NCBI RefSeq assembly: GCF_044704955.1
Contig: NC_091990.1
Span: 28,210,001 to 28,274,000, forward strand
Length of the DNA stretch: 64,000 bases
Direction of reading: 5' to 3'
Origin: Pristiophorus japonicus
Taxonomy: Eukaryota
Shown: piece by piece, positions 19,158-63,460 of the stretch
Numbering within the stretch: the stretch's first letter is position 1
Layout: each line of letters starts with the position of its first letter
Notes under the pieces: model-generated
Seen by the model: the letters and a program-made list of their open reading frames with translations, nothing else
Told to the model about the DNA's origin: nothing
Databases searched by the model: none
Program-made: the position numbers and the translations under genes

Positions 19158-19330
19158 TCATGGCGGGCCTGATTTAATGTATTCAATTTTCTTTGGTTTA
19201 ATATACCTGTGTTTATGTAACATGACAGCTAGTGCTATTATTGTCATTATTATGAGTATAGTCCCCAGAATCTAACTTATGAGGGCTGTATAATAATTGC
19301 AGGAAAGTTCTTGCTTCTGGATAGAATTTT
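19158..19330 (-). pseudogene. Copy C TM/cytoplasmic exon with premature stop
   Basis: ttcag|AA acceptor; ENSIQKQELSCNYYTALIS*ILGTILIIMTIIALAVMLHKHRYIKPKKIEYIKSGPP*; paralogous to 44112-44305. Confidence 0.85.
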
Positions 19331-19823
19331 CTGAAAGTAGAAAAAAATAAGGAAAAAGACTTTAATTCATTGAATAAAAAGAATCATAAAAATAGAAGCA
19401 GCACAAAAAATATCACAAGTAGGTTCTATTCAGTTGCGACTGAGTTTCTACTGGGTAGAGTTGACTAAAATGCTGAGCATTGGCAAATTACTGAACCCTC
19501 AACTTATATGTACTAGCGATGAAAATTATGTGAATTGAATGTGTTTCGTACAGGTTAATTTTCTAAAATAATAAATCGATAACTCAGTCATTATTATGAA
19601 AAAGGAAAGTCTAGCTCCTCCAGTGGCTCAGTGAGTCTCTGCAGTAAGTAGCTGAGTCAGGCAGTCTCACATTCAATATATGCTGAGTTAGCGGATAACA
19701 GCTGGGACAGCGGTACGGATGTGACAATTGGTCTTAATGCTCGAGGGTTATCAGTGAGCCATTCTAAAACTGCACCTTTGTGGTGAGGATAGGATCAGGT
19801 ACAGCTCTGATGCACCATTGATA

Positions 19824-20971
19824 TCATCATCATCATCATCATCATAGGCAGTCCCTCGGAATTGAGGAAGTCTTGCTTCCACTCTTAAAATGAGTCCTTA
19901 GGTGGCTGAACAGTCCAGTACGAGAGCCACAGTCCCTGTCACAGGTGGGACAGATAGTCGTTGAGGGTAAGGGAGGGTTGGACAGGTTTACCGCATGCTC
20001 TTTTCGCTGCCTGCGCTTGCTTTCTGCATGCTCTCGGCGATGAGACTCGAGGTGCTCAGCGCCCTCCCAGATGCACTTCCTCCACTTAGGGCGGTCTTTG
20101 AACAGGGACTCCCAGGTGTCAGTGGGGATATTGCACTTTATCAGGGAGGCTTTGAGGGTGTCCTTGTAACATTTCCTCTGCCCACCTTTGGCTTATTTGC
20201 TATGAAGGAGTTCCGAGTAGAGCACTTGCTTTGGGAATCTTGTGTCTGGCATGCAGACGATGTGGCCTGCCCAGCGGAGCTGATCAAGTGTGGTCAGTGC
20301 TTCAACGCTGGGGATGTTGGCCTGGTCGAGGACGCTAATGTTGGTGCGTCTGTCCCCCCCAGGGGATTTGTCGGATCTTGCGGAGACATCGTTGATGGTA
20401 TTTCTCCAGCAACTTGAGGTGTCTACTGTACATGGTCCATATCTCTGAGTCATACAGGAGGGCAGATATTACTACAGCCTGTTAACCATGAGCTTGGTGG
20501 TAGATTTGAGGGCCTGGTCTTCGAACACTGTTTTCCTCAGCTGGCCGAAGACTGCACTGGCGCACTGGAGGCGGTGTTGAAACTCGTCATCAAAGTCTGC
20601 TCTTGTTGATAAGAGGCTCCCGGGATATGGGAAATGGTCCACGTTGTCCAGGGCCGCGCCGTGAATCTTGATGATTGGGGGGCAGGAATCCCCGCTGAGA
20701 CACTGAAGTATGGCGGAGAGGCACTGTTGGGGCGAATACATGACCTCATCTGTCTCATCTGGAGGGAGGAGAGCATGCCGAGAGATCTCAGAGATGCAGT
20801 GATCATGACCATCTTTTAAAAAATGGGACAAGTCTGACTGCGGCAACTACAGAGGAATCTCCCTGCTATCAGCCACTGGGAAAGTTGTCGCTGGAGTGCT
20901 CCTCAACCGTCTTCTCCCTGTGGCCGAGGAGCTCCTCCCGGAGACACAGTGTGGATTTCGTCCCCTACGGG
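19824..20971. mobile_element. RTE LINE insertion with 5' inversion in the IgC-TM intron of copy C
   Basis: (TCA)n tail at left; minus-strand 3' part to ~20680, then plus-strand RT part; 12-bp TSD gcaccattgata (19812-19823, 20972-20983); empty site in copies B and A. Confidence 0.92.
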
Positions 20972-21109
20972 GCACCATTGATAATCCTCCTAGTAAAAAC
21001 CACTATTAATTTTTCCACATAAATAATAACCTGCCTGAGTATGAGAGTGGCCTGTTACCTTCAGGAGAGATGGAGAGAAAGAAAATTGGTGAGAAAAGCA
21101 AGGACTTAC

Positions 21110-21391
21110 CTGGAATAACAAAACTAAGTGTCCCGGAGATAATTTGATTGACAGCAGCATTTCGTAACACGAATGTATAGTTTGATCTCCTTTCCGTGAC
21201 ATTGATTTCGATAGTGCTTTGGACTGTGTACAGACCATCGGCAGTTTGCTGGTGTGAAGATTTGGACAAAAGGGAATTATTCAGGTTGTCTCCGTTATAC
21301 CAAGAAACATCAGCCTTAGGGTGCCCTCGGGACTAGAACGTTAAAATGGTGCTGGACAGTTTCTGTTTGATCAACAGTATTGGCTCATTGT
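21110..21391 (-). pseudogene. Copy C IgC exon, disrupted
   Basis: Donor CCAG|gtaagt at 21110; in-frame TAG at 21333-21335; acceptor inverted; otherwise colinear with 44931-45218. Confidence 0.88.
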
Positions 21392-21461
21392 TTTAATTTT
21401 GCAGCATACTACAATCATTCAGTCTTGCCTCTTCAGTCATAAATGATACAGTGCCATTGCT

Positions 21462-23570: not shown

Positions 23571-23924
23571 CTGCAAATTTGACAGAGACTATTCCTTTCT
23601 CATGCCCAATTGTATTACTGACATAACACTGGTACAGTCCAGTGTCCTCTGGTCTTACTGCTTCCAATTTCAGTGAAGCATTTCCATTTTGAAACTCCTG
23701 TGGGAATAGACTTGTTCTGCCTGAATATTGAGGATGCTGCTTGCTGAACTGGTCGTCTCCATAATAATAACTGTGGACAACCTCATCGGTCTCGACACGC
23801 TGCCAGGTGACAATGAGATTCTCCACAGTTGGTCCTCTAGTCACAGGAAAACTGCATCCTAGCACAGCAATTTGGCCATGGATAGCTGTCACTGGTCCCT
23901 TAATCATCCTGACTTCAAATCCTT
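23571..23924 (-). CDS. Copy C IgV exon (B7-family V-set), intact
   Basis: 354 nt, phase 1-1, cag|...GCAG|gtaagt; LGCSF, VTWQR, VHSYYYG, GRTSLF, GNASLKL, EDTGLYQC. Confidence 0.92.
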
Positions 23925-25297: not shown

Positions 25298-25349
25298 CAC
25301 TAACTGCGAGTTGTTGCCACAGAACAAGGAAAAGGAATTGAAATTTCAT
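25298..25349 (-). CDS. Copy C signal-peptide exon (coding part)
   Basis: MKFQFLFLVLWQQLAVS + G|gtaagt (phase 1, matches the IgV acceptor); polypyrimidine acceptor tttctttctttaag at 25377. Confidence 0.85.
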
Positions 25350-35550: not shown

Positions 35551-35559
35551 TAGGCAAAT

Positions 35560-36423: not shown

Positions 36424-36890
36424 TTATCCAGTCATTTTCTCTGCTGTTTGTGGGACTTTGCTTCATGCAGACTGGTGGCTGCATTAGCCTCCATTATAAC
36501 AGCGACTACATTTCAAAAGTACTTCAGTTGCTGTGCAGCTCTTTAAGATGTCCTGAGGGTCTGAAAGGCGCTATATCAATGCAATGTATTTCATCCTTTC
36601 CTGCACCCTCAGACTGGCTCTGAGTCCGCTGATTGTTGGTCCAGACACAGTTATAGCCTTAAACTACACAACCTTGGCTGAAACTTTCACTAAAACACGA
36701 CATTGTAGTAACTGCTGACTTGTGGATGAGATGTTAAATTAACGCCATGTCCCCTGCTCTGACAGATGGAAAAGGTCCAACGGTAATATTTGAAGAAGAG
36801 CAGGGAGTTCACCTGGTACCCTGGCCAACGTTCCTGTCTCAACCAACAACACCAAGATCAGGTTATCTGGCCATTCATTCATTTCACGAG

Positions 36891-44111: not shown

Positions 44112-44194
44112 TCATGGCGGACCTGATTTAATGTATTCGATTTTCATTGGTTTAATATACCTGTGTTTATGTAACATGACAGCAAGTACTATTA

Positions 44195-44228
<34 letters not shown>

Positions 44229-44305
44229 GAGTATAGTCCCCAGAATCCAACTTGTGAGGGCTGTATAATAATTGCAGGAAAGTTCTTGGTTCCAGATAGA
44301 ATTTT
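44112..44305 (-). CDS. Copy B stalk/TM/cytoplasmic exon (alternative donor possible at 44161)
   Basis: ENSIWNQELSCNYYTALTSWILGTIL(I)10TIIVLAVMLHKHRYIKPMKIEYIKSGPP*. Confidence 0.85.
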
Positions 44306-47300: not shown

Positions 47301-47859
47301 ATAGTGCAGCACTCCCTCAGCACTGTAGTGTCAGCCTAGATTTATGTGCTCAAGCCTCTGGAGTGGGACTTGAACCCACACCTTCAGACGACAAAGGCAA
47401 GCATGCTACCCACTGAGCCACAGCTGTAGATACTGCTGATGTTCTGATGGAGGATTTATTCACCAATGATGTAAAACTACTTATCCTAACTCATTCCAAA
47501 CAACCAGCCTCACAAAATTCAAACAGGTCAAACCTGCAAGTAAGAAATGAGAATGGCTAAAGAACGCAGTGGACTGCATCGTGAATGGTTAGAGGTGAAT
47601 AAGGTTTAACGGGCCATAATTCACACCCTGTGTTTACCCATAGGACCAATCACCTCCTCGATTGTTTGGTTATAAATGAAAAACTGATTTTAAAGCTGCC
47701 AGTTATAAAAATAATAATTCTGCACAAATATTGAACCGTAACAAAAAACAAATGCAGAACATCACACTGAATTCCTTGAAATTAAGTTAGTTATGACTTA
47801 CGACCAACTATGAGTTGTCCCCACAGCACAAGAATATGGAACTCAGATTTCAATCTCAT
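44112..47859 (-). CDS. B7-family IgV-IgC type I membrane protein, copy B (HHLA2/CD276/VTCN1-like), ~297 aa; exons 47859-47802, 46703-46350, 45218-44931, 44305-44112
   Basis: All junctions GT-AG and phase 1; 58+354+288+194=894 nt open frame. Leader MRLKSEFHILVLWGQLIVG; IgV with B7-type VHSYYYG..Q..Y.GRTSLF...GNASL; IgC-like GYPKADVSW; hydrophobic TM followed by HKHR. Confidence 0.88.
44931..45218 (-). CDS. Copy B IgC-like exon (no cysteines)
   Basis: 288 nt; ttttgcag|CA acceptor; CCAG|gtaaga donor; AYYNEP...ILTFESRGYPKADVSWY...YTVQSTI...NYTFVLRN. Confidence 0.9.
46350..46703 (-). CDS. Copy B IgV exon
   Basis: 354 nt, phase 1-1, canonical C, W and DxGxYxC. Confidence 0.93.
46990..47425 (-). 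mobile_element. tRNA-derived SINE, same family as 41943-42408 (paralog 63750-64000)
   Basis: Reverse-complement A box (cccactgagccac), B box (ggacttgaacc) and central Deu-like core. Confidence 0.8.
47802..47859 (-). CDS. Copy B signal-peptide exon (coding part)
   Basis: ATG...GGT C|gtaagt; acceptor tttctttcttttaag at 47871; homologous to 25298-25376. Confidence 0.8.
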
Positions 47860-48669
47860 CACTCTCTCTCCTTAAAAGAAAGAAATACAAGATATGTAAA
47901 TAAACATGGTCATTATTAAATGAATTACTATACATCAATAAACAAGAATTTGCCCACGTGGTCATTCTACATGTGCGAGCCCAGAGAGTGAATGTTGGCC
48001 GGCTATTCGACAACGGAAGGCACCGCAGTCTAGTCTGACACTGCCCTCACTCGCTGCTCAGAAGGCAAACTCTCAGCAAGTTATTGTGGAGCGATCAGGG
48101 CAGGCTGGATCATTTAACAGGGAGAAGTTTTACATCTACAATGCAGTAACAGATAGTCACACTTGCAGGTGTTGGATGTGCTGGTGGGGAAGGGGCGGCT
48201 TCAACCAGCGCCATTTGCCCATTCAGCCCCGGCCCACTGGGGGCTGGAGAGATCGCTGACGGCGCTCGCAGAGCCCGGGACCTGGCCGCAACTTTGAAAC
48301 TTGTGTCGGGGCCACCGGGCTATTCCCGACAAGCGGCCGCTCCCACTCTGTCACCTCAATGTACCGGGAGACCGGGGGACACAACAAGGCTGGGGAAGAA
48401 GGGGACATCTCCTCTCATCTCCTCACCCTCACCCTCACTCTTTACTCTCACTCTCACTCGCCTCGGAACACCGCCCTGCATGAAACCACAAAGCTGCAAT
48501 GAGGGAATCACGGCCGAAGCTGTATTTATGGCCTCTCTTGACGCAAGCATTCCAATAAAACGGAAATGACATATCCCTGACAACGGGAACCACAGCAAAC
48601 TTAATAAAGCAAAGCTAATAATTACACGGAGGAAAAGGTTGGAAGTCATAAAGAAAAAAATGAAAAGCG

Positions 48670-49007: not shown

Positions 49008-50282
49008 GATCGGGAGGGCGGGGGTGGGGGGGTGAAATTAATTACTGCCCCGTTTAGGGGGCGTGAAACTTTGCGGCAGGTGCGCAGGTCCCGCCCGGTT
49101 TCCGCCCCGCCCCCGGAGGGAAGTGGAGCGTGTGATTTGGGGCAGTAACGGGGCCGAGCGGCTCAGCAGCACAACGCAGTCCGAGAGGCTCCTCCCTCAA
49201 TTAAAGGGAAAGGCCCACGCTGCCGACTCTGCAGAAGAAGGTGGCACCTACATGGATCGCCAGGGACCAAGTGCCAGACTGTGCGATCGCGGCCACAGTC
49301 CCGCGTCGAAACCACATCAGGAATGGCAACGAAAAGGTGATTTTTGTTTCAGCACTCGGCCATCTCCCCTTTAATCTTCGCCCCGGTAGCGGCCGGCCGG
49401 CCGGCCGATACGTGTCCTCTGAAGCTGATGCTGTTATCGCCCCGATCTGCTTCAGCGGGCGGAAGCCAATTTCGGGACCGGGGCGCTAACAGGCCGGTAC
49501 CCACGCCGAAGACGTCACGATCTCCGGGCACGGGAGATCGGGGAGCACCGTAACATTGCCGCTACCTCCTGCCCAAGGTGGCGGGTCTTGTTGCCAGCGG
49601 ATTCCCCACTCAGGCCTGAGTTAAAATTACAGTCGGGCTTCAATTATGTCATTGGGACGCAACATGCATGTGTAAAGAAGGACCCTGTTGGTTCCGGGCG
49701 CCTGTCCTTGCTGCCTGCTCAGGAGAGCAGGTTAAAATTGCAGATGTTGCTATCATGGCTGCTTTCAGACAGGTAAGAGCCAGGACAACTTTAAGTGCCC
49801 ACCCGCCAGTTGTCTGCTGTGCGAATATGGTTAAAATCGCCCCCAATATATTTGAAGACTATGTTATAATCAATATAGCTGCTGAATGAGTTGCAAGGAG
49901 ATTGCCTGTAAAATCACAGGGGGATGAAGGAAAAAGTTATTATTTTTTATCTTGTGTCTTCATATCTTCACTTGCTAGCTCCTTCTGTTTCATGACTACC
50001 TTGTGAGTTTTTTTGAGTGGGCTTGAGCCCCACTCAGAGATTTGAACCCATAATCGAATCAGACATTTCAGTGTCGCACTGAAGGAATGCTACAATGTTG
50101 AAAGTGGTCATTCAGGTGCCTTGTTAGATTGACGCTCAATCTGCCCTCTCAGGTGAATGTAAAAGATTCCATGGCACAATTAAAAAAAGAGCAGGGAAGT
50201 TCTCCTGGTACCCTGGCCAACGTTCCTGTCTCAACCAACAACACCAAGATCAGGTTATCTGGCCATTCATTCATTTCACGAG

Positions 50283-53200
50283 TCATCATAGGCAGTCCCT
50301 CGAAATCGAGGAAGACTTGCTTCCACTCTAAAAGTGAATTCTTAGGTGACTGAACAGTCCAATACGGGAATTACAGTCTCCGTCACAGGTGGGACAGTCG
50401 TTGAGGGAAAGGGTGGGTGGAACTGCTTTGCCGCACGCTCCTTCCGCTGCCAGCGCTTGATTTCTGTATTCTCTCGGCAACGAGACTCGAGGTGCTCAGC
50501 GCCCTCCCGGATGCATTTCCTCCACTTAGGGCGGTGTTTGGCCAGGGCCTCCCAGATTTTGGTGGGGATGTTGCATTTTATCAAGGAGGCTTTGAGGGTG
50601 TCCTTGTAACGTTTCCGCTGCCCACCTTGGGCTCGCTTGCCGTGAAGGAGTTCCGAGTAGAGCGCCTGCTTTGGGAGCCTTGTGTCAGGCATGCGAACAA
50701 TGTGGCCTGCCCAAGGGAGCTGGTGGAGTGTGATCAGTGCTTCGCTCCTGGGGATGTTGGCCTGATCGAGGACGCTAACATTGGTGCTAGGTGGTCTGTC
50801 CGCCCAGGAAATTTTCAGGATCTTGCGGAGACATCGTTGGTGGTATTTCTCCAGCGATTTGAAGTCTCTACTGTATATGGTCCACGTCTCTGAGCCATAC
50901 AGGAGGGCTGGTATCACTACAGCCCTGTAGTCCATAAGCTTGGTGGTAGATTTGAGGGCCTGATCAGGAGGCCGAAGGCTGCGTTGGCACACTGGAGGTG
51001 GTGTTGAATCTCGTCATCGATGTCTGCCCTTGCTTAAAGTAGGTTGCCAAGGTATGGAACATGGTCCACGTTGTCCAGGGCCATGCAGTGGATCTTGATG
51101 ACTGGGGGGACAGTGCTGTGTGGCGGGGTCAGGTTCTTGGAGGACCTTTGTCTTACGGATGTTTAGTGTAAGGCCCCTGCTTTCGTACACCTCAGTGAAG
51201 ATGTAACTATGACTTGTCATTCAATTTCTGAATGTGCGCAGACGCAAGCGTTGTCCGCACACTGTAGTTCGACGACAGAGGTTGGGACGGTCTTGGATCT
51301 GGCCTGGAGACGTCGAAGGTTGAACAGGTTCTCACTGGTATGGAACATGGTCCACGTCGAAGGTTGAACAGGTTCCCACTGGTTCTGTAGTTTAGTTGCA
51401 TTCCCGGCATGCTCTCCTCCTTCCAGATGAGAGAGATGACGTCATGCATTCTTGCCAATAGTGCCTCTCCGCCATACTTTAATGCCTAAGTGGGGATTCC
51501 ATCTACTCCCGACGACTCCTTTTTCTTGAGCTGATGGATGGCCTTTTCTATCTCGTGGGATTACGGAGACGTGGCTCCAGGATGATCAGGGCTGGGAACT
51601 CAACATTCAGGGGTATTCAACATTCAGGAAGGATAGAATAAAAGGAAAAGGAGGTGGGGTAGCATTGCTGGTTAAAGAGGAGATTAATGCAATAGTTAGG
51701 AAAGACATTAGCTTGGATGATGTGGAATCTATATGGGTAGAGCTGCAGAACACCAAAGGGCAAAAAACGTTAGTAGGAGTTGTGTACAGACCTCCAAACA
51801 GTAATAGGGATGTTGGGGAGGGCATCAAACAGGAAATTAGGGGTGCATGCAATAAAGGTGTAGCAGTTATAATGGGTGACTTTAATATGCACATAGATTG
51901 GGCTAGCCAAACTGGAAGCAATACGGTGGAGGAGGATTTCCTGGAGTGCATAAGGGATGGTTTTCTAGACCAATATGTTGAGGAACCAACTAGGGGGGAG
52001 GCCATCTTAGACTGGGTGTTGTGTAATGAGAGAGGATTAATTAGCAATCTCATTGTGCGAGGCCCCTTGGGGAAGAGTGACCATAATATGGTGGAATTCT
52101 GCATTAGGATGGAGAATGAAACAGTAATTTCAGAGACCATGGTCCAGAACTTAAAGAAGGGTAACTTTGAAGGTATGAGGCGTGAATTGGCTAGGATAGA
52201 TTGGCGAATGATACTTAGGGGGTTGACTGTGGATGGGCAATGGCAGACATTTAGAGACCGCATGGATGAATTACAACAATTGTACATTCCTGTCTGGCGT
52301 AAAAATAAAAAAGGGAAGGTGGCTCAACCGTGGCTATCTAGGGAAATCAGGGATAGTATTAAAGCCAAGGAAGTGGCATACAAATTGGCCAGAAATAGCA
52401 GCGAACCCGGGGACTGGGAGAAATTTAGAACTCAGCAGAGGAGGACAAAGGGTTTGATTAGGGCAGAGAAAATGGAGTACGAGAAGAAGCTTGCAGGGAA
52501 CATTAAGGCGGATTGCAAAAGTTTCTATAGGTATGTAAAGAGAAAAAGGTTGGTGAAGACAAACGTAGGTCCCCTGCAGTCAGAATCAGGGGAAGTCATA
52601 ACGGGGAACAAAGAAATGGCAGACCAATTGAACAAGTACTTTGGTTCGGTATTCACTAAGGAGGATACAAACAACCTTCCGGATATAAAAGGGGACAGAG
52701 GGTCTAGTAAGGAGGGGGAACTGAGGGAAATCTTTATTAGTCGGGAAATTGTGTTGGGGAAATTGATGGGATTGAAGGCCGATAAATCCCCAGGGCCTGA
52801 TGGACTGCATCCTAGAGTACTTAAGGAGGTGGCCTTGGAAATAGCGGATGCATTGACAGTCATTTTCCAACATTCCATTGACTCTGGATCAGTTCCTATG
52901 GAGTGGAGGGTAGCCAATGTAACCCCACTTTTTAAAAAAGGAGGGAGAGAGAAAACAGGGAATTATAGACCGGTCAGCCTGACCTCAGTAGTGGGTAAAA
53001 TGATGGAAATATTATTAAGGATGTCATAGCAGTGCATCTGGAAAATGGTGACATGATAGGTCCAAGTCAGCATGGATTTGTGAAAGGGAAATCATGCTTG
53101 ACAAATCTTCTGGAATTTTTTGAGGATGTTTCCAGTAAAGTGGACAAAGGAGAACCAGTTGATGTGGTATATTTGGACTTTCAGAAGGCTTTCGACAAGG

Positions 53201-55530
53201 TCCCACACAAGAGATTAATGTGCAAAGTTAAAGCACATGGGATTGGGGGTAGTGTGCTGACGTGGATTGAGAACTGGTTGTCAGACAGGAAGCAAAGAGT
53301 AGGAGTAAACGGGTACTTTTCAGAATGGCAGGCAGTGACTAGTGGAGTGCCGCAAGGTTCTGTGCTGGGGCCCCAGCTGTTTACATTGTACATTAATGAT
53401 TTAGACGAGGGGATTAAATGCAGTATCTCCAAATTTGCGGAGGATACCAAGTTGGGTGGCAGTGTGAGCTGCGAGGAGGATGCTATTAGGCTGCAGAGTG
53501 ACTTGGATAGGTTAGGTGAGTGGGCAAATGCATGGCAGATGAAGTATAATGTGGATAAATGTGAGGTTATCCACTTTGGTGGTAAAAACAGAGAGACAGA
53601 CTATTATCTGAATGGTGACAGATTAGGAAAAGGGAAGGTGCAACGAGACCTGGGTGTCATGGTACATCAGTCATTGAAGGTTAGCATGCAGGTACAGCAG
53701 GCGGTTAAGAAAGCAAATGGCATGTTGGCCTTCATAGCGAGGGGATTTGAATACAGGGGCAGGGAGGTGTTGCTACAGTTGTACAGGGCCTTGGTGAGGC
53801 CACACCTGGAGTATTGTGTACAGTTTTGGTCTCCTAACTTGAGGATGGACATTCTTGCTATTGAGGGAGTGCAGCGAAGGTTCACCAGACTGATTCCCGG
53901 GATGGCGGGACTGACCTATCAAGAAAGATTGGATCAACTGGGCTTGTATTCACTGGAGTTCAGAAGAATGAGAGGGGACCTCATAGAAACGTTTAAAATT
54001 CTGACGGGTTTAGACAGGTTAGATGCAGAAAGAATGTTCCCAATGTTGGGGAAGTCCAGAACCAGGGGTCACAGTCTGAGGATAAGGGGTAAGCCATTTA
54101 GGACCGAGATGAGGAGAAACTTCTTCACCCAGAGAGTGGTGAACCTGTGGAATTCTCTACCACAGAAAGTAGTTGAGGCCAATTCACTAAATATATTCAA
54201 AAGGGAGTTAGATGAAGTCCTTACTACTCGGGGGATCAAGGGTTATGGTGAGAAAGCAGGAAGGGGGTACTGAAGTTTCATGTTCAGCCATGAACTCATT
54301 GAATGGCGGTGCAGGCTAGAAGGGCTGAATGGCCTGCTCCTGCACCTATTTTCTCTGTTTCTATGTTTTCTATGTTTCTATGTGCAGGGTTGGGGTTTTG
54401 CTGAGATGGTGGCGGGTAGCATGCTGCGGGATGGAGTCGAGGACCCTTGTGTCAAAGTCAGAGTCTCGATTAAGGAGATCTTCGAAGTGCTCCTTCCAGC
54501 AGGTCCTGACTGCCTCGGTGTCCTTGATGAGTGTCTCCCCGCTCTTGGCCAGCAGTGGGGTGGGGCCTTGGGTGCTTGGGCCAGAGGTGGACTTGACTGC
54601 GGTGAAGAATTCTCGCACATCATGGCTGTCGGCCAGCTGCTGAATCTTCTGTGCTTTCTCCATCCACCATCTATTCTTTAGGTCACTGTTTTTTTGTTGG
54701 ACCTTGGCTTTAAGCCGTCTGTAATGCTGCTTTGCTGCTCCAGAGTTGTATTTTTTTAGGTTCAGAAATGCCCTGCACTTGCGATGTATTAGCTCTTGGA
54801 TCTCCTGGTCATTCTCATCAAACCAATCCTGGTGTTTCTTGGTTGAGTGACCGAGCGTCTCTTCGCAGGAATTGGTTATGGTGGTCTGGAGGGCGGACCA
54901 AGCGCTGTGGACATTCTGCATCTCGGGGTCATCAAGGGTTGCCAGGTTAGCAGTGAGGTGCTGGCTGTATAGGGCTCTCTTAGCTGGGTCTTTGAGTGAC
55001 CCGGCCTTGACTTTTTTGCGGCACTGCTTCTGCTGCCATCGCCACTTTGGGGCTATGTTGATGTTGATGATGGAACGGATTAGGCGGTGGTCTGTCCAGC
55101 AGTCGTCAGCTCCTGTCATAGTGCGGGTGATGCGCACATCCTTGCCTTGCCAGACTCGAACGATGACATAGGCGAGCAGGTGCCAGTGTTTGGAGCGAGG
55201 GTGTTGCCACGATGCCTTGTACTTGTCCCTCTGGTGGAACAAGGTGTTCGTGATGACAACGTCGTGCTCTAGGCATTTTGTCAGGAGCAGGGTACCGCTG
55301 GAATTGGTTTTCCCTACCCCCTCTCTGCCGATCATGCCTCCCCAGAGGGCTGTGTCCTTTCCGACCCTGGCATTGAAGTCGCCAAGAAGGATCAGTTTGT
55401 CGTCTGTAGGGACACGGGATAGGGATTTTTCGAGGCTGGAATAAAAACCCTCTTTGGTCTCATCTGTTGCATTGAGGGTTGGGGCGTACGCACTGATGAC
55501 TGTGGTGCATTGATTCCGGGATAGGATAGG
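50283..55530 (-). mobile_element. Duplicated RTE LINE (paralog of 36891-39310), split by CR1
   Basis: Near-identical to 36891-39310, including the internal deletion. Confidence 0.9.
51558..54381 (+). mobile_element. Young CR1 LINE, near-complete ORF2 with one frameshift
   Basis: ORFs 51665-53029 (EN) and 53032-54273 (RT); (tttctatg)n tail; absent at the paralogous site ~38161. Confidence 0.95.
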
Positions 55531-58500
55531 ATACGATGTTGTATAAAGGCAAGTTCTTTCTCGCGATTTCTCTCGTTTAACATCTGCCAAAGTAAAATAA
55601 CTTTTGCCGGCAATATTTCTTATTGCTGCTGGAGTGCAAAGGAAATGGCCCTCTATAGCTGTCTAAAGTTCTTCAACTTCCCCAGAATAGTTTGCATTTT
55701 CTTTTTGATACTCACCTTGTTGTACACATGAACAGTTTTACTCTTATGTACAGTAAGAGTGCTCTGCCCTTCAGACACTTCTGTTCTCTGCAGTACTTGT
55801 ATTCTGGGCGGTGTTAGGACCCTTCAATCCATGCAATAGCTGAGGGCTCCAAACCAGACAATGGCCCCGAGCAGATCCAGTAATGTTTCTGAATTGAGGT
55901 AAATCAATCTATTTTATATTATTTATTGCAAACATGCCTTTTCACCATGGTGCATGTGTAAATTTGAGCCCAGATTAAATAGATATTATTTAGTATCATT
56001 ATCCAGTAAATGTAAAGCCCCCAAACTGAACTTTAGCACGGGCAGCTGCAAGGCAGTGGCTGCTCCTGGTTGTATTCCATTCCAGCAGCCTTTATACTCT
56101 GCCAGTCCTCTTCATATCAACCAGTCTGAAGCAGCTGGCTGCAACCCAACGATAAAGCTGACACATTCACTCTGACCTGAGACTCTGTAAAAAGCAGCTC
56201 TAAACCCTGCCACTGGACGGAGCAAATTCTGGCAGGTTGTCTTTGGTTGCAGCTGGCCACATGGGGACAGGCACTTGTTGCAGAGTCTAAAAGCTGCATG
56301 AGTAGTTATCTTACAATGTGCTTGTATCTTCCATTGTGCCAGTGTTAAAATCTAGCCGGCAGTTTACATCATTCCTGACAGCAGGTTGGTCTTTATAACG
56401 TTGCTACGCATAGCCACCCCAATTTGAAGAGCAGCGTTGTAAACTGAGCTGGATGGTGCCTCCAGAGCAGCCCAAACTTAACGCAAGAGGTGGTTTTCAC
56501 CGGAATTGATGTAGACGTTCTGCTTTATTGTGCAGCACAAGAACAACAGAAATACAACTGCATATGCAAGACCAGGAGAGATGCCTGAGGTGGAGCAGAG
56601 GGAGAAGCATTGCAAGAGATATATTGCCCATGTCGGGATAGGTTGGAATAGCACTATGTAAAGGAAATGCCACAGAAGTTGTCCATGGAGAGGAGACGGC
56701 AGAGAAATATGGTGTGATCAACTGCATTGAAAACTGTGGTGAGGTCAAGGCAAGATAATGTTGGTGATTTTGACCAGTGTGGTCCCCATCCTGCGCTGGG
56801 ATACAATACAAACTGAAGGGATGGGAAGATGGAGGGTAAGAAGAAGTGAGCATGGAGGTAGGTGACAATGACACAGTTGTTGAGCTTGGAGAGAAAGGGG
56901 AGGTCAGAGATGGAGCAATAGATGAGTGGGGTAGGAAGCAATGCCCCAGGAAACGGAGCAATTGACAAGGCCAGCAAACAGGTCACCACGGAAAGGTAGT
57001 TAAGTGCATTGATCAATATAGAGGAGATGACACAAAGTATTGAGGCTGAGGGCATTGAGACAAGGAAATGGTCAGAGATGTCCTTGTTGGTAATTGACAT
57101 TGTGGCTATGGTGAGAGCAAGTGTGTTGTGGTGAGTTCAGGGTGAGTATTTTCCTTGGACTTGGAATGTGGGCAACATTGGCGAGGCCGTATTTATTGCC
57201 CATCCCAAGCTTTCCTGAAGGTATTGAAGCTCAACCACATAATGTGGGACTGGAGTCACATGTGGACCAGAACAGTTGGTGTTTAACAACAATCCAGAAG
57301 CTTTAATAGCCACATTTCTGCTGCTAGCCCCATAGTATTAAATTTTCATCAAATTCAATTTCACAATTCGCCATGTAGGGTTTTCACTCAAAACCTTTGG
57401 ATTGCAGATCTGGTGCCATAACCGCGAGGCTACTCTAATAAAGGCAGAGGGCAGAGACGTTGGTGGAAGGGGACAAGGGAATTTAGCTGTGAGTGGAATT
57501 AACTAGTTCCCATGTGAATCCTCTTGTTATGGCACTGATTCACTTTTACATGATGCCTTATTACCTAGAGGTGAAAACATTGAGATTTGGGAAGCTTATC
57601 GACACGATGAACAAAATATTGCCCTCCACAGTTTACATTCCAGCACTGAAATACTTTCCATCTATAAAAGCTAATGTAAATCAGCTTGATCTCCTTCTCT
57701 GGCTGGGTGTCATTTTTTTTCTGGCTACGCTTCTTTAATGTACCTTGGACATTTTGCTACATTAAGGGTGTTATATAAATACCAGATGGGGCCAGACAAG
57801 AAAATCGTCCCAATCACACTTCTATACTCTATTCCCGCATCACTTCATTCACTTTTGTTCCATCCAATTATCGTCTGATCTTGAATGTTGACAAAGTGCC
57901 TGCTTCAAACCTCAATTCTGAAAGTGAATTCCACTCCACACCCTATGTGTAAAGAAGTTTCTCAAGTTCTTTGTTCAAAATCTCATACATTTATTCTTGT
58001 ATCTATGGCCCCTTGTTTTGGCGTCGTTAACTACTGACATAGCTTTCTATCTCAAAATTTCACTCCTTGTCTCTGTAGCTGTTTTTTCCCTCACTCTTTC
58101 TTTCTCCTCTGCAAGTGTCTCCTTCCCTCTGTATCCGAATTTTCCTCTATGTCCTTCACTCTGCGTGAATTTTATTTCTGTTCTTTTGTCTCGCACTCTC
58201 TCTTTCTATCTTCATGTCTATCACTGTCCCCTCTTTCCTTTACCTCCAGTACTGTCCTAGAGCCAGACCTGGGGCTTCAAATCTCCATATAGCCACAGAA
58301 ATGACCTCATCTGTGATGGGAGGGGGAAGAGCTTGCAGCTGGCAAGGAATGGGATGGATGTTCAGTCATGGCCTGAGATAGAGGGAGCTGTGATGGGAGC
58401 ATCTGTGCATGCTGGGACAGGCACTGAAGAGGAGGTCCCATGAAAACATAAAACATTTCTCTGACTGTTCCTCCCACTACCCTCCACACCCCCTCCCCCT

Positions 58501-59138
58501 CACCACCACCACACCTTCCCCACAATACACCAGCTGCATTTTCTTGGCAGTCCTTGAGCAGTATGATTGATGCACTGGGTTGTGCCAGAATATATATTCA
58601 ATGCGCTGCCCTTGCATTATTGAATGAGAACAGCTGAGTGTGCACAAGTACACGTGGTGCCTGAGGGGAGTGCTCCCAACAATGCAGTACCGGGCCAGCA
58701 CTGTTGCGACCAGTGATATTCTACAACCTCAATTCATGCGAGAATGGTGGAACATTAAATACCAAACCAGAGTCATACATACTTGATTGCTGTGTTTAAT
58801 TCAGAAATAAATAAGTCAGTGAAACATAAGGAGTAGGAATGACAATAGAAAACAGATTAGACAAATACTCAGGGTGCAGGGAAACATTTGCAAACATACA
58901 ACACAGCCAGCATCTAGAAATTGTTGGTTGGCTACTACAGCACTTTTTTCAATTATTAATAGGTTTAGAACACAACCAGTCATCAAACACTCCCCTTCCT
59001 CTTATTCTCATGTAGTTACAGATAGCTCCATCAACTGACCAGTTAGATAATCTCTCTCACTGAATATTACAAACATCTCCTTATCAGCTCAAGTTCATAT
59101 GGATCACTCAGTATGAATACAGGTGGATCTCTCGATGA

Positions 59139-60646
59139 TTCCCAACATTCCATTGACTCTGGATCAGTTCCTATCGAGTGGAGGGTAGCCAATGTAACCC
59201 CACTTTTTAAAAAAAGGAGGGAAGAGAGAAAGCAGGGAATTATAGACCGGTCAGCCTGACCTCAGGAGTGGGTAAAATGATGGAATCAATTATTAAGGAT
59301 GTCATAGCAGCGCATTTGGAAAATGGTGACATGATAGGTCCAAGTCAGCATGGATTTGTGAAAGGGAAATCATGCTTGACAAATCTTCTGGAATTTTTTG
59401 AGGATGTTTCCAGTAAAGTGGACAAAGGAGAACCAGTTGATGTGGTATATTTGGACTTTCAGAAGGCTTTCGACAAGGTCCCACACAGGAGATTAATGTG
59501 CAAAGTTAGAGCACATGGGATTCGGGGTAATGTGCTGACGTGGATTGAGAACTGGTTGTCAGACAGGAAGCAAAGAGTAGGAGTAAATGGGTACTTTTCA
59601 GAATGGCAGGCAGTGACTAGTGGGGTACCGCAGGGTTCTGTGCTGGGGCCCCAGCTGTTTACATTGTACATTAATGATTTAGACGAGAGGATTAAATGTA
59701 GTATCTCCAAATTTGCGGATGACACTAAGTTGGGTGGCAGTGTGAGCTGCGAGGAGGATGCTATGAGGTTGCAGAGTGACTTGGATAGGTTAGGTGAGTG
59801 GGCAAATGCGTGGCAGATGAAGTATAATGTGGATAAATGTGAGGTTATCCACTTTGGTGGTAAAAACAGAGAGACAGACTATTATCTGAATGGTGACAGA
59901 TTAGGAAAAGGGGAGGTGCAACGAGACCTGGGTGTCATGGTACATCAGTCACTGAAGGTTGGCATGCAGGTACAGCAGGCGGTTAAGAAAGCAAATGGCA
60001 TGTTGGCCTTCATAGCGAGGGGATTTGAGTACAGGGGCAGAGAGGTGTTGCTACAGTTGTACAGGGCCTTGGTGAGGCCACACCTGGAGTATTGTGTGCA
60101 GTTTTGGTCTCCTAACTTGAGGAAGGACATTCTTGCTATTGAGGGAGTGCAGCGAAGATTCACCAGACTGATTCCCGGGATGGTGGGACTGACCTATCAA
60201 GAAAGACTGGATCAACTGGGCTTGTATTCACTGGAGTTCAGAAGAATGAGAGGGGACCTCATAGAAACGTTTAAAATTCTGACGGGTTTGGACAGGTTGG
60301 ATGCAGGAAGAATGTTCCCAATGTTGGGGAAGTCCAGAACCAGGGGTCACAGTCTAAGGATAAGGGGTAAGCCATTTAGGACTGAGATGAGGAGAAACTT
60401 CCTCACCCAGAGTGATGAACCTGTGGAATTCTCTACCACAGAAAGTAGTTGAGGCCAATTCACTAAATATATTCAAAAGGAAGTTAGATGAAGTCCTTAC
60501 TACTCGGGGGATCAAGGGGTATGGCGAGAAAGCAGGAAGGGGGTACTGAAGTTTCATGTTCAGCCATGAACTCATTGAATGGCGGTGCAGGCTAGAAGGG
60601 CTGAATGGCCTGCTCCTGCACCTATTTTCTATGTTTCTATGTTTCT
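59139..60646 (+). mobile_element. Young 5'-truncated CR1 LINE
   Basis: RT ORF 59268-60452; (tttctatg)n tail; atga duplicated; empty site at ~43869. Confidence 0.95.
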
Positions 60647-60880
60647 ATGAGATTGCATGTGGATCACGGTATGATACCAAGTGTATCTCTCGATGAGATT
60701 ACATGTGGATCACTCGATAACATTGCATGTGGATCATTCATCCATATTCCAACCATTCAGACTCATTCATTGGAACAAAGAGCACTCACAGAATATCCAT
60801 TTGTCCCCAAATCGAGACTCACACTCCAGCAGAGAATTGGTTACAACAACCATCGGGAAAATTTGAGATCCAAAGTCATC

Positions 60881-61062
60881 TCATGGCAGACCTGATTTAA
60901 TGTATTCGATTTTCATTGGTTTAATATACCTGTGTTTATGTAACACGACAGCTAGTACTATTATTGTTATTATTATTATTATTATGAGTATAGTCACCAG
61001 AATCCAACTTGTGAGGGCTGTATAATAATTGCAGGAAAGTTCTTGGTTCCAGATAGAATTTT
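60881..61062 (-). CDS. Copy A stalk/TM/cytoplasmic exon
   Basis: ENSIWNQELSCNYYTALTSWILVTIL(I)6TIIVLAVVLHKHRYIKPMKIEYIKSGLP*. Confidence 0.85.
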
Positions 61063-61687
61063 CTGAAATTAGAAAATAATAAGGAAAAAATCTTTTATTC
61101 ATTGAATAAAAAGAATCAAAAATAGAAGCAGCACAAAAAATATCACAAGTAGGTTCTATTCAAATGCGACTGAGTTTCTGGTGGGTGGAATTGACTAAAA
61201 TGATGAGCATTGGCAAATTACTGAATCCTCAACTTAAATGTACTAACGATGAAAATTGTGTGAATTGAATGTGTTTCCTATAGATTAATTTTCTTAAAAT
61301 AATAAATCAATGACTCAGTCATTATTATGAAAAATGAAAGTCTAGCTCCTCCAGTGGCTCAGTGAGTCTCTGCAGTAAGTAGCTGAGTCAGGCAGTCTCA
61401 CATTCAATATATGCTGAGTTAGCGGATAACAGCTGGGACAGCGGTACGGATGTGACAATTGGTCTTAATGCTCGAGGGTTATCAGTGAGCCATTCTAAAA
61501 CTGCACCTTTGTGGTGAGGATAGGATCAGGTACAGCTCTGATGCACCATTGATAATCCTCCTGGTAAAAACTACTATTAATGTTCCCACATAAATAATAA
61601 CCAGCCTGAATGTGGGAGTGGCCTGGTACCTTCAAGAGAGATGGAGAAGAAAAAAATTGGTGAGGGGAAAAAAAGGCAAGGTCTTAC

Positions 61688-61975
61688 CTGGAATAAGAAA
61701 ACTAAGTGTCCTGGAGGTAGTTTGATTGACAGCAGCATTTCGTAACACAAATGTATAGTTTGATCTCCTTTCCGTGACATTGATTTCGATACTGCTTTGG
61801 ACTGTGTACAGACTGTCAGCAGTTTGCTGGTGTGAAGATTTGGACAAAAGGGAATTATCCAGGTTGTCTCCGTTGTACCAAGAAACATCAGCCTTCGGGT
61901 ACCCTCGAGACTCGAACGTTAAAATGGTGCTGGATAGTTTCTGGTTGATCAACAGCATCGGCTCATTGTAGTATG
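61688..61975 (-). CDS. Copy A IgC-like exon (no cysteines)
   Basis: 288 nt, intact splice sites, 2 aa differences from copy B. Confidence 0.9.
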
Positions 61976-63106
61976 CTGCAAAATTAAAACAATCAATCAT
62001 TCAGTCTTGCCTCTTCAGTCATAAATGTTACACTGCCATTGCTGAAGACCTTTGGTAAATGCTTGGTCTACATTGCAGAAAAATACATGAACTAATAAAA
62101 TGATTATAAAGTTGCTGGTTACCACCTGTCACTTATTTGCTTGAAGTACAAGGGGTGCAGCACGGAGAGCTGGGGGTCAAGTGCGTACTTGATATTTGAG
62201 TTCTGCACAGGTTGAGCATCCTCAGAAGAGGAAAAAATGATTTGATCACAATCTCACTTCATCATGGGCAGATTAGCCTGACCCTTACCCCAGGGAACAT
62301 CTATTCTCCGGGCACAAAGATTATAAAAGGGTTTAAAGCCAATTACGCCAAGCATCCACCTCCTTTAGACTGCCCTGGGATTTCCTGGGATTGCTCCAAA
62401 GGCGGAGTAGGACCTGTGCCAGCAAGAGGCGCAGTCACTGTGCTCACTCAAATGAGGTGGAAGGGACATTCCTGGCCTCCTACTGGATAGATCTCCCTTT
62501 GCAACCCAGAGGCATCCAGATGTAGAGGTACCCCAAGAAGCTGATGGTGGGCCCTGTGTTCTGTACCCAATTGGGTCAGTGGGTGTGAGGGGACATGGCA
62601 GTAAAGCAAAGAGAAACCAAAAGGTATCTGAAAGTTTTTTTTTAAACTACGACTTATTAGATCGTCTGCCATTCAGGCAACTGTTCTCCAACTGACATTT
62701 CCTGAATCAAGGCCCGGTAAGGAGTACTAGGGCTGTGACCGGACCATATTCAAATGGAGCTCGAACTTCAGAGAGGGGGCCCGGTAAATCAGCCTCGAGT
62801 GCTATTGTGAGGCATCATAAAACTAAATGTTCCAATACAGTGAATCTCCTCCAAATTTTATCCAGTGATTCAGGCAATTTGAGAAATGTTCCAACAGCAC
62901 GAGATTAAATAATGGGCTATATTAGCTCGATCCCACAGTGTGCCTAATAAAACTTAATGAGAAGAAGTTTACAGTACATGGCCTGTTACCCGTTCACTGT
63001 GAATAGAGGGAGAGGATGAATCCCAGGCTACATTGCCGTAGCATGAGTCAGCAACTTCAGGTAAGATGGGGAACTAAGATAAGAGAAATATGTTCAGTAT
63101 ATTTAC

Positions 63107-63460
63107 CTGCAAATTTGACAGAGACTACTCCTTTCTCATGTCCAATTGTAGTACTGACATAACACTGGTACAGTCCAGTGTCCTCTGGTCTTACTGCTTC
63201 CAATTTCAGTGAAGCATTTCCATTTTGAAACTCCTGTGGGAATAGACTTGTTCTGCCTGAATATTGAGGATGCTGCTTGCTGAGCTGGTCTTCTCCATAA
63301 TAATAACTGTGGACAACCTCATCGGTCTCGACACGCTGCCAGGTGACAATGAGATTCTCCACAGTTGGTCCTCTAGTCACAGTGAAACTGCATCCTAGCA
63401 CAGCAATTTGGCCATGGATAGCTGTCACTGGTCCCTTAATCATCCTGACTTCAAATCCTT
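63107..63460 (-). CDS. Copy A IgV exon (leader exon expected ~0.6 kb beyond the window end)
   Basis: 354 nt, intact, 2 aa differences from copy B. Confidence 0.93.

What the first reader, a model, noticed from the sequence alone, without database searches (positions are those of the whole stretch)
19158..63460. Tandem birth-and-death cluster of an atypical B7-family immune ligand
Seen: three leader-IgV-IgC-TM gene copies on the minus strand (two intact, one disabled) plus a fourth unit reduced to flanks. Established: the IgV motif VHSYY.G.D....Q...Y..RTSLF.....GNASL is typical of the B7 family (HHLA2, CD276, VTCN1), whose members are usually single-copy co-signalling ligands. Inference: this is a lineage-specific expanding B7-like subfamily, probably in a cartilaginous fish, with a Cys-free IgC, a microsatellite-encoded TM and a stalk Cys.
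Basis: partly seen in the sequence, partly recalled or inferred. Interest (0 to 1): 0.8.

Follow-up and report, generated by a model that had tools for sequence, protein, structure and literature searches.

The report
Sawshark CD276-like gene tandem cluster
This stretch of sawshark DNA holds a recently duplicated pair of working B7-H3 (CD276)-like immune-ligand genes, a broken third copy and the stump of a fourth; the genes are real and expressed, but they are already auto-annotated and belong to a family found in most fishes.

Summary
On the minus strand there are two intact leader-IgV-IgC-TM genes, B at 44115-47859 and C at 60884-63460. They are 98.6% identical. Copy A (19161-25349) is disabled, and a fourth unit survives only as its 5' flank (35558-36425).

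The Ig exons of B and C translate exactly into two Pristiophorus japonicus database proteins named 'CD276 antigen-like' and 'CD276 antigen homolog'. So the genes are already annotated.

Contigs of two public runs carry GT..AG joints at exactly leader->IgV and IgV->IgC, so the locus is spliced and expressed.

The nearest solved structure is human B7-H3, then PD-L1.

None of the 154 stored relatives that aligned to the IgC exon has the Cys pair. They come from sharks, rays, chimaera, lungfish and ray-finned fishes.

Elasmobranchs carry three old paralogue clades. B and C are a sawshark-specific duplication inside one of them.

Copy A keeps an intact leader and an IgV exon 98.3% identical to B inside a ~550-bp high-identity tract. 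That pattern points to gene conversion.

Orthology to tetrapod CD276 could not be tested.

Verdict: ordinary in kind, of modest interest. The same scan noted other B7-like genes elsewhere in this genome.

The parts
63107..63460 (-). Copy C, IgV exon (phase 1-1)
   Evidence: The translation is an exact substring of P0165. Pfam V-set 3.8e-13.
61692..61975 (-). Copy C, IgC exon with Phe at both canonical Cys positions
   Evidence: The translation is an exact substring of P0165. Aligned with B and A.
60884..61062 (-). Copy C, stalk-TM-tail exon ending in a stop; (ATA)6 run
   Evidence: Matches the end of P0165.
59139..60643 (.). LINE fragment inserted in the 3' region of copy C after the duplication. 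B 43866-43872 is matched on both sides, which reads as a 7-bp target-site duplication.
   Evidence: block ends. An RNA contig runs from the C-type flank into exactly 59139-59168.
50184..59138 (-). Spacer downstream of C, the duplicate of 36793-43872, with a further LINE insertion at 51557-54382
   Evidence: 97-98% identity. RVT_1 4.3e-24 for 53032-54273.
47802..48334 (-). Copy B, first exon: 5'UTR plus leader CDS 47859-47802 (MRLKSEFHILVLWGQLIVG, donor C|GTAAGT, phase 1)
   Evidence: One X1 contig covers 47802-48334 and joins to 46703. The leader translation is in P0316.
46350..46703 (-). Copy B, IgV exon
   Evidence: Joints 46703->47802 and 45218->46350, both CT..AC on the + strand. Exact substring of P0316. 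Best PDB match is the human CD276 single-V chain, 7.2e-18.
44935..45218 (-). Copy B, IgC exon, Cys-free (LTF.., YTF..)
   Evidence: Joint at 45218. Pfam C2-set_2 4.9e-6, 26.9 bits against cut-off 21. Exact substring of P0316.
44115..44305 (-). Copy B, stalk (Cys)-TM-short tail exon with stop; (ATA)n at 44199-44228 encodes a run of ten Ile
   Evidence: The acceptor is tttcag|AAAATTC.
43507..44114 (-). 3'UTR continuous with the TM exon
   Evidence: X2 contig 43507-44181 is unbroken across the stop and across the GT that follows ...CACAG.
36793..43872 (-). Spacer downstream of B (transposon-rich), duplicated downstream of C
   Evidence: Four of its ORFs plus four from the neighbouring stretches show transposon domains or nothing.
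35558..36425 (-). Fourth unit: only the 5' flank / first-exon homologue is left. The leader and the Ig exons are gone, and LINE and Gypsy sequence follows.
   Evidence: 88-94% identical to the A and B flanks.
25298..25349 (-). Copy A, leader exon, intact (ATG two codons later than in B; MKFQFLFLVLWQQLAVS; donor G|GTAAGT; phase 1)
23571..23924 (-). Copy A, IgV exon, open, with good splice sites and 348 of 354 bases identical to B. It lies inside a high-identity tract of about 550 bp.
21110..21415 (-). Copy A, IgC exon remnant. A 29-bp inverted segment (21387-21415) destroys the acceptor, and there is an in-frame TAG at 21335-21333.
19839..20685 (.). LINE fragment inserted in the IgC-TM intron of copy A
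   Evidence: 82% identical to 36891-37721 and 50283-51113.
19161..19330 (-). Copy A, TM exon with a premature TAG at 19274-19272 (TGG in B and C); (ATA)3

Best explanation
The window comes from the Japanese sawshark (Pristiophorus japonicus). It carries a head-to-tail array of four units of one B7-family gene of the CD276 (B7-H3)-like kind.

Each intact unit has four coding exons: leader, IgV, IgC, and stalk-TM-19-residue tail. It encodes a type I surface glycoprotein of about 293-297 aa. Its IgV face is presumably a ligand for an unknown receptor on lymphoid cells. The short tail has no conserved signalling motif, so the protein most likely acts as a ligand only. That function is inferred, not shown.

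Units B and C are a young duplicate pair and both look functional. Unit A is a pseudogene for the full-length protein. Unit 4 is a stump.

The array grew by unequal crossing-over of a unit of about 17 kb. It then diverged by LINE insertions, microsatellite slippage in the TM exon and point changes, and was partly re-homogenised by gene conversion around the IgV exon.

The disulphide-less IgC, with Phe in place of both Cys, was inherited from an ancient fish-wide gene family and did not arise at this locus.
For: Identity:
- The IgV and IgC exon translations of B are exact substrings of P0316, and those of C are exact substrings of P0165. Both are Pristiophorus japonicus UniParc entries.

Expression and structure:
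- Joints 46703->47802 (X1 and X2) and 45218->46350 (X1) have CT..AC ends, which is GT..AG on the minus strand.
- In X1, exon word depth is about 455-800 against 2.5-14 in the introns.
- X2 contig 43507-44181 runs unbroken through the stop.

Family:
- Pfam V-set and CD80-like C2-set.
- The family profile against PDB gives CD276 5.6e-48, PD-L1 3.2e-40, BTN1A1 9e-29 and ICOSL 9e-26.
- The AlphaFold model of P0165 has mean pLDDT 90.1, with the IgC blocks mostly at 96-98. Its best fold match is human B7-H3, 9lme_A, TM 0.81.
- Relatives named 'CD276 antigen-like' occur in sharks, rays, chimaera, lungfish, bowfin, gar, sturgeon, bichir and teleosts.

Cys-free IgC is family-wide:
- Of 315 stored proteins, 154 align to the IgC exon and none has C/C. 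The commonest pairs are F/F 65, Y/F 31, L/F 20 and L/V 12.

Phylogeny (48 rows):
- Three elasmobranch clades have support 97/96, 100/98 and 100/100.
- B and C are sisters (100/99) next to the Heptranchias gene.
- The six clade-1 clusters I opened, covering seven other species, hold isoforms of one gene each.

B and C are distinct loci:
- They differ at 47 of 3,379 aligned columns.
- C's unit has two LINE insertions that B's lacks, one with a 7-bp duplicated target.
- RNA contigs show both the C-type LINE junction and the uninterrupted B-type site.

Gene conversion:
- A and B are identical at 535 of 550 positions across 46737-46188, against 403 of 646 in the flanking windows.
- The IgV exon is 348/354 identical, against 471/564 in the V-C intron.
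Against: - The IgC->TM joint is not among the 15 joints shown; 30 more were not shown, and reads were cut at the microsatellite. That junction rests on splice consensus, on the database models and on the same junction in orthologues.
- The two runs are of unrecorded kind, belong to one study and are kept only as contigs. Such contigs can be chimeric between near-identical copies.
- The contigs carry variants found in neither B nor C, so I cannot say which copy gives which transcript. More copies or other haplotypes probably exist.
- No tetrapod sequence came up in my family searches, so the name CD276 rests on similarity to solved human and mouse chains, not on a tree or on synteny. The window holds no non-transposon neighbour gene.
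- Ligand function is pure inference.
- A tandem mis-assembly of two haplotypes is unlikely but not excluded.
Confidence: 0.85

Rival explanations
1. B and C are one locus written twice: two haplotypes, or a collapsed repeat, placed in tandem by the assembler.
For: They are 98.6% identical over 3.4 kb and about 97% over the spacer.
Against: There is no N or gap anywhere in the window. C's unit has two private LINE insertions, one flanked by a 7-bp duplicated target. The RefSeq-derived entries are two separately named proteins, not isoforms. RNA contigs show C-type bases (46384T, 46527G, the leader Q codon) and B-type bases at the same sites in another run. A and unit 4 show that the array was already tandem before this duplication.
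Confidence: 0.05
2. The units are exon blocks of one long multi-Ig gene (VCVC...), as in the 4Ig isoform of mammalian B7-H3.
For: All Ig exons are phase 1-1, so they could be spliced in series. Mammalian 4Ig-B7-H3 arose by tandem duplication of the V-C exon pair (PMC3172298, abstract and two passages seen).
Against: B has its own leader exon, and that exon is spliced to its IgV (joint 46703->47802). Each unit has a TM exon with a stop, and a contig runs on unspliced into the 3'UTR. The database proteins are 293 and 317 aa. Orthologues in other sharks are 268-304 aa.
Confidence: 0.03
3. Copy A is not dead. Its intact leader and IgV exon, kept like B and C, either give a short secreted V-only product by skipping the broken IgC exon and stopping at the TM-exon TAG, or serve as a donor of IgV sequence for B and C.
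For: The leader is intact with a consensus donor. The IgV exon is open, has both splice sites and is 98.3% identical to B. IgV and the TM exon are both phase 1. V-TM forms without IgC exist among stored family members (P0065, 181 aa). Of the 16 contig differences from B that I could map onto A and C, 9 equal A's base and not C's.
Against: Recent conversion into A explains the identity without any function. The A-like bases sit in contigs that otherwise match B and C where A is very different.
Confidence: 0.12
4. The family is not the fish orthologue of CD276. It is a separate old B7 lineage, defined by the lost IgC disulphide, that tetrapods no longer have.
For: Every IgC-alignable relative lacks the Cys pair (0 of 154). 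These include lungfish, chimaera and bichir, while human and mouse CD276 keep it (alignment). No tetrapod protein appears in the lists. Three paralogue clades already existed in the elasmobranch ancestor.
Against: The word-based search tool can miss distant relatives, so its blank means little. CD276 is clearly the best solved match, about 25-35 bits above PD-L1, down to the ...RN..L.Q motif after the second Cys position. PMC13262535 (passages seen) counts CD276 as present in all jawed vertebrates.
Confidence: 0.3

Closest known systems
Human and mouse CD276 (B7-H3; PDB 9lme, 9ly6, 4i0k)
   Same: It has the same leader-IgV-IgC-TM-short-tail layout and is the best sequence match. The IgV exon alone gives 7.2e-18, with 102-104 residues aligned. 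The family profile gives 5.6e-48. It is also the best fold match (9lme_A, E 1.6e-19, TM 0.81, 30% identity). The motifs around VHS., RT.LFP, GNASL.L and .RN..L.Q are shared.
   Different: The mammalian IgC keeps its disulphide, whereas both positions here are Phe. The human gene duplicated its V-C exons inside one gene, whereas here whole genes are duplicated. The tail is shorter here, and there is a stalk Cys. Orthology was not tested.
'CD276 antigen-like' of other cartilaginous fishes (e.g. Heptranchias perlo XP_067863116.1 = P0014; Callorhinchus milii 'CD276 antigen' V9L2M8 = P0052)
   Same: P0014 is 73% identical over the IgV exon and 67-70% identical to P0165 over the whole length. It has the same exon junctions, the same Cys-free IgC and the same C-terminal ...K.I.YI....P ending. 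These are the direct relatives, and the sawshark genes are themselves in the databases.
   Different: In the species whose clusters I opened there is one gene per species in this clade. The sawshark has two live copies, a pseudogene and a stump. The poly-Ile run and the stalk Cys are not present in Heptranchias.
PD-L1 (CD274)
   Same: It is the second-best solved relative by sequence and fold. One shark relative in the same clade (clade 1) is auto-named 'PD-L1-like' (P0171).
   Different: Fish PD-L1, as described in PMC12151841 (section 12 read), is a single gene with at least eight exons and often a long conserved tail. Here there are four coding exons, a 19-residue tail and many paralogues. 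That paper's sequences are in supplements that I could not see.
Butyrophilins (BTN1A1, BTN3A, BTNL3/8)
   Same: They have the IgV-IgC ectodomain fold, occur in tandem multigene clusters and show similar fold scores.
   Different: There is no B30.2/SPRY exon. The reading frame stops 19 codons after the membrane segment, and the spacer ORFs I scanned (four, plus four from neighbouring stretches) show transposon domains or nothing. Sequence scores are about 60 bits lower than for CD276.

Membership tests
B7 family, CD276 (B7-H3)-like | Type I layout: signal peptide, IgV, IgC, one TM segment and a short tail, with one domain per exon and phase-1 introns | tested here: met
   Exon borders come from the RNA joints and from the sequence. 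The model shows two beta domains and one long helix, 234-280.
B7 family, CD276 (B7-H3)-like | V-set IgV with the Cys pair, and closest similarity to CD276 among solved proteins | tested here: met
   V-set 3.1e-13. The CD276 chains are the top four matches. C43 and C119 are invariant in 39 of 39 aligned relatives.
B7 family, CD276 (B7-H3)-like | CD80-like C2-set membrane-proximal Ig domain | tested here: met
   PF08205 at 26.9 bits against a cut-off of 21. The IgC blocks of the model are mostly at pLDDT 96-98.
B7 family, CD276 (B7-H3)-like | Canonical B-F strand disulphide in the IgC domain | tested here: not met
   Phe stands at both positions in B, C and A. The same holds for the family, with 0 of 154 C/C. 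Human CD276 has Cys at the aligned positions.
B7 family, CD276 (B7-H3)-like | Orthology to tetrapod CD276 (tree with tetrapod B7 genes; conserved neighbours) | not tested
   No tetrapod sequence was returned.
B7 family, CD276 (B7-H3)-like | Co-signalling through a receptor on lymphocytes | not testable with these tools
   Inference only.
Butyrophilin / BTNL | Cytoplasmic B30.2 (PRY-SPRY) domain | tested here: not met
   There is a stop after a 19-residue tail. The 3'UTR is contiguous in RNA. No SPRY domain appears in the 8 ORFs scanned from the spacer and neighbouring stretches.
Fish PD-L1 | Single gene per fish genome, at least eight exons, often a long conserved tail (PMC12151841, section 12) | tested here: inconclusive
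   The layout differs (four coding exons, multicopy). The paper's sequences are in closed supplements and were not compared.
4Ig-B7-H3-type internal exon duplication | V-C-V-C in one transcript | tested here: not met
   Each unit has its own leader joint and its own stop with 3'UTR. The proteins are 293 and 317 aa.

The most novel reading that the evidence does not exclude
Fish 'CD276-like' genes may form a separate ancient branch of the B7 family. Its membrane-proximal Ig domain gave up its disulphide, with Phe-Phe packing in its place, before sharks and bony fishes split. It had already split into three paralogues in early elasmobranchs, and tetrapods lost it. Within this branch, tandem copies such as A, B and C keep exchanging their IgV exon by gene conversion. 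A 'dead' copy with an intact leader and IgV would then serve as a sequence donor or as a secreted V-only decoy.
Probability: 0.2. Interest if true: 0.55.

Novelty: new member of a known kind. Interest (0 to 1): 0.33.

Why it matters
For this locus alone, it matters little. The two live genes are already in public annotation as CD276-like, and recent tandem duplication of immune genes is common.

Three side results may interest comparative immunologists:
- A B7 family conserved from chimaera to teleosts has a confidently folded IgC domain without the canonical disulphide. I found no paper describing this in the library I could search.
- Elasmobranchs carry three old CD276-like paralogues. This bears on what 'CD276 is conserved in all jawed vertebrates' really means.
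- The sawshark array shows duplication, pseudogenisation by a micro-inversion of a splice acceptor, and an exon-centred conversion tract side by side.

B7-H3 is a major cancer target whose receptor is unknown, so natural variants of its fold could be useful comparison material.

Tried and rejected
Assembly artefact, one multi-Ig gene and butyrophilin were each considered and rejected. The reasons are given under the rival explanations and the membership tests.

Leader. A first candidate at about 48640 (MTSNLFLRV...) was dropped. It has no usable donor, and the RNA joint uses 47802.

The putative donor CACAG|GT inside the TM exon was rejected as a used splice site. A contig runs through it, and the database proteins and the orthologues read on to the same ...P stop.

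Selection between B and C. Exons carry 11 differences in 817 sites against 6 in 1,363 intron and flank sites (Fisher p 0.024). I left the 3'UTR piece (0 of 157) out of that count. There are too few changes to build on: 4 non-synonymous against 3 synonymous codon differences in the two Ig exons.

The Fisher test on the A-B tract used rounded counts (15/550 against 113/465) that I derived. The window counts are the primary figures.

Literature. Six full-text searches were answered. None turned up a paper on shark or fish CD276-like genes, their copy number or the Cys-less IgC. Hansen et al. 2009 and Flajnik et al. 2012 are cited in PMC11599192 (passages seen). I tried to open only Flajnik et al. 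2012, and it is not held; I did not try Hansen et al. 2009, so I read neither. Either may already describe fish B7-H3 features, so 'not in print' is not claimed beyond those searches. Supplements were not opened. Supplementary Files 1B and 2A of PMC12151841 list shark PD-L1 sequences that could bear on naming.

The three homologous-protein searches and the one HMMER library search gave no tetrapod relative. Given the word filter and the length limits, that is not evidence of absence.

Spliced model. I searched the window's exons one by one and did not join them. Whole-protein work (alignment, tree, fold) used the stored database proteins P0165 and P0316 and their relatives.

Full report
What is there.

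The window is transposon-rich and has no N. A self-comparison shows three related minus-strand segments. B (43866-47241) and C (60644-64000) are 98.6% identical. A (18995-23997, in pieces) is 87-92% identical to both. The long spacer downstream of B (36793-43872) is repeated downstream of C (50184-59138) at about 97%. In C's unit it is interrupted by two LINE fragments (51557-54382 and 59139-60643).

B's bases 43866-43872 are matched on both sides of the second insertion. That is what a 7-bp target-site duplication looks like, so this LINE entered C's unit after the duplication.

The IgV-to-IgV distance between C and B is 16,757 bp.

Gene structure.

Translation and splice sites give four coding exons per intact unit:
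- a leader: B 47859-47802, MRLKSEFHILVLWGQLIVG, donor C|GTAAGT;
- an IgV exon: B 46703-46350;
- an IgC exon: B 45218-44935;
- an exon with stalk, TM segment and a 19-residue tail ending in a stop: B 44305-44115.

All junctions are phase 1.

The IgV and IgC exon translations of B are exact substrings of P0316 (317 aa, 'CD276 antigen-like'). Those of C are exact substrings of P0165 (293 aa, 'CD276 antigen homolog'). Both are from Pristiophorus japonicus. B's leader is also in P0316.

So the window is sawshark DNA and both live genes are already auto-annotated. Other reports of this scan also call this genome a sawshark.

Expression.

No run on record as RNA holds the stretch. However, the two listed runs of unrecorded kind (one study, kept as contigs) behave like RNA when laid on 43000-48999.
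- A contig joins 46703 to 47802, skipping 1,098 bases. It is seen in X1 at depth 73 and in X2 at depth 2.6.
- Another joins 45218 to 46350, skipping 1,131 bases, in X1 at depth 497.
- Both skipped parts end in CT..AC on the + strand, which is GT..AG on the gene's strand, and they sit exactly at the predicted exon borders.
- X1 word depth is about 455-800 over the Ig exons and 2.5-14 over the introns.
- The first exon runs on to at least 48334, so the GC-rich flank shared by A, B and unit 4 is transcribed 5'UTR.
- X2 has one contig from 43507 to 44181. It runs through the stop codon and through the GT after ...CACAG, so the TM exon is the last exon.

The IgC->TM joint is not among the 15 joints shown. 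Thirty more were not shown, and reads were cut at the microsatellite.

An X1 contig over 43601-43872 continues into letters that match 59139-59168 exactly, which is C's LINE junction. The leader contigs carry the base that turns B's Glu codon into the Gln of P0165.

Which copy is expressed cannot be read off safely.
- X1's IgV contig has C's bases at 46384 and 46527, while X2's has B's.
- Of the 21 listed differences from B, 16 could be mapped onto A and C. Of these, 5 equal C, 9 equal A but not C, and 2 equal neither.
- The A-like bases sit in contigs that are otherwise B/C-like where A is very different.

Further copies or haplotypes therefore probably exist. Chimeric contigs are an alternative explanation.

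The broken copies.

A keeps an intact leader exon (25349-25298; the start codon lies two codons later; consensus donor). It also keeps an open IgV exon with both splice sites (23924-23571).

Downstream it is disabled four ways:
- A 29-bp segment at 21387-21415 is the exact reverse complement of B 45208-45236. It is a 19-bp core between 5-bp inverted arms, and it turns the IgC acceptor around. This confirms an earlier first-reader note.
- There is a TAG in IgC at 21335-21333.
- A LINE fragment lies in the IgC-TM intron.
- There is a TAG in the TM exon at 19274-19272.

The fourth unit is about 870 bp (35558-36425), homologous to the 5' flanks of A and B. It is followed by LINE and Gypsy sequence instead of a gene body.

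Mosaic divergence.

A and B are identical at 348 of 354 bases in the IgV exon, but at only 471 of 564 in the V-C intron. They are identical at 263 of 284 in the IgC exon and at 467 of 491 in the IgC-TM intron.

In 50-column windows the near-identity runs from about 46737 to 46188 (535 of 550). That is about 35 bp upstream and about 160 bp downstream of the exon. The neighbouring windows give 403 of 646.

A tract that overruns the exon fits gene conversion better than purifying selection. So do the five non-synonymous to one synonymous codon differences.

Between B and C, the exons differ slightly more than the introns (11/817 against 6/1,363, p 0.024). That is too few changes to interpret.

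What family.

Pfam finds V-set (3.1e-13) and the CD80-like C2-set (26.9 bits, cut-off 21).

Against solved structures, the IgV exon is closest to human CD276 (7.2e-18 for a single-V chain). Next come BTNL3, MOG, VTCN1 and PD-L1. The IgC exon is closest to CD276 and PD-L1.

A HMMER search of 1.84 billion representatives with the IgV exon gave 3,646 hits at E <= 0.001. The best single-domain hit is a 288-aa Heptranchias protein at 73% identity.

Named relatives are nearly all 'CD276 antigen-like'. They come from sharks, rays, chimaera, lungfish, bowfin, gar, sturgeon, bichir and many teleosts. No tetrapod appeared, but the search method cannot exclude them.

A profile of 39 family members hits CD276 at 5.6e-48, PD-L1 at 3.2e-40, BTN1A1 at 9e-29 and ICOSL at 9e-26.

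AlphaFold2 on P0165 with that alignment gives mean pLDDT 90.1, with the IgC blocks mostly at 96-98. Foldseek puts human B7-H3 first and PD-L1 and BTN3A just behind. The protein atlas agrees.

The 'atypical' features.

Both canonical IgC cysteines are Phe in A, B and C. But among the 315 proteins stored, 154 align to the IgC exon and none has the Cys pair. The commonest pairs are F/F 65, Y/F 31, L/F 20 and L/V 12. The other 161 did not align at E 1e-3, and most are multi-V proteins.

The loss of the disulphide is therefore a family trait shared by cartilaginous and bony fishes. The model still folds with high confidence.

The Ile run of the TM segment is an in-frame (ATA)n of about 10, 6 and 3 units in B, C and A. 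Heptranchias has no such run.

The stalk Cys is present in the three sawshark copies and in some but not all relatives.

The tail tyrosines are not conserved within the clade, so no signalling motif is proposed.

How old is the expansion.

A maximum-likelihood tree of 48 proteins resolves three elasmobranch clades with support 97/96, 100/98 and 100/100. One of them includes the chimaera 'CD276 antigen'. B and C are sisters (100/99) with very short branches, next to Heptranchias.

The paralogues lie on one chromosome-scale contig in at least eight species, judged by equal contig lengths. For six clade-1 clusters covering seven other species, the members are isoforms of a single gene or orthologues in sister species.

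So paralogy in this family is ancient, and only the A/B/C/unit-4 array is specific to the sawshark line.

How it probably works.

Shown: two transcribed, correctly spliced genes for a type I membrane protein with a B7-H3-like ectodomain.

Inferred: the protein is glycosylated (NAS, NVT, NYT and NQT sites), sits at the cell surface, and presents its IgV face to a receptor on lymphoid cells. Even for human B7-H3 the receptor is not settled (recalled, not from a call). Also inferred: the protein signals only as a ligand, the array grew by unequal crossing-over, and conversion keeps the IgV exons alike.

Limits.

Supplements were closed. The runs are contigs of unrecorded kind from one study. Orthology to tetrapod CD276 was not tested.

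Verdict.

The genes are a new, recently duplicated member set of a known and already annotated kind. The family-wide disulphide-less IgC and the exon-centred conversion tract are the points worth a specialist's second look.

Noticed in passing
window 21387-21415: A 29-bp segment of copy A is the exact reverse complement of B 45208-45236. It is a 19-bp core between 5-bp inverted arms (ATTGT/ACAAT), and this micro-inversion removes just the IgC splice acceptor.
   Followed up: yes
window 43000-48999 (runs X1, X2): RNA-derived contigs carry bases found in neither B nor C. Of the 16 mappable differences from B, 9 equal copy A's base, and four of them cluster at 46187-46196, the edge of the A-B high-identity tract. 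X2's contig passes B's uninterrupted site at 43872 yet has C's base at 44119. This suggests more copies or haplotypes, or a polymorphic LINE insertion.
   Followed up: partly
window 47000-47400 and 48800-48999: Repeats in B's first intron and upstream reach word depths of 10,000-126,000 in both runs. The sequence at about 47340-47420 looks like a tRNA-derived SINE head to me by eye (not tested).
   Followed up: no
window 24200-24652: A minisatellite of 22 copies of a 20-bp unit (89% matches) lies between the leader and the IgV exon of copy A. B has nothing like it at that place.
   Followed up: no
window 11025-14030: A 3-kb block with 62-70% G+C and strong C-over-G skew, made of many imperfect internal repeats (74-83% identical self-matches).
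   Followed up: no
proteins P0177, P0179-P0181, P0183, P0187, P0188, P0190-P0193, P0152 (clade 3): The third elasmobranch paralogue clade lacks the canonical IgC pair, but most of its members have two other conserved cysteines in that domain (...WYC... and ...YCNH...). This may be a replacement disulphide.
   Followed up: no
proteins P0065, P0189, P0155, P0157-P0159: Short database forms of family members lack all or part of the IgC domain (for example P0065, 181 aa, IgV joined to the TM). IgC skipping may therefore be a regular isoform in this family.
   Followed up: no
window 544-4224 and 26967-33345: Two copies, 87-88% identical and in opposite orientation, of a Gypsy-type retrotransposon. 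The second copy has RT, RNase H and integrase hits. It fills the place where the gene body of unit 4 should be.
   Followed up: partly
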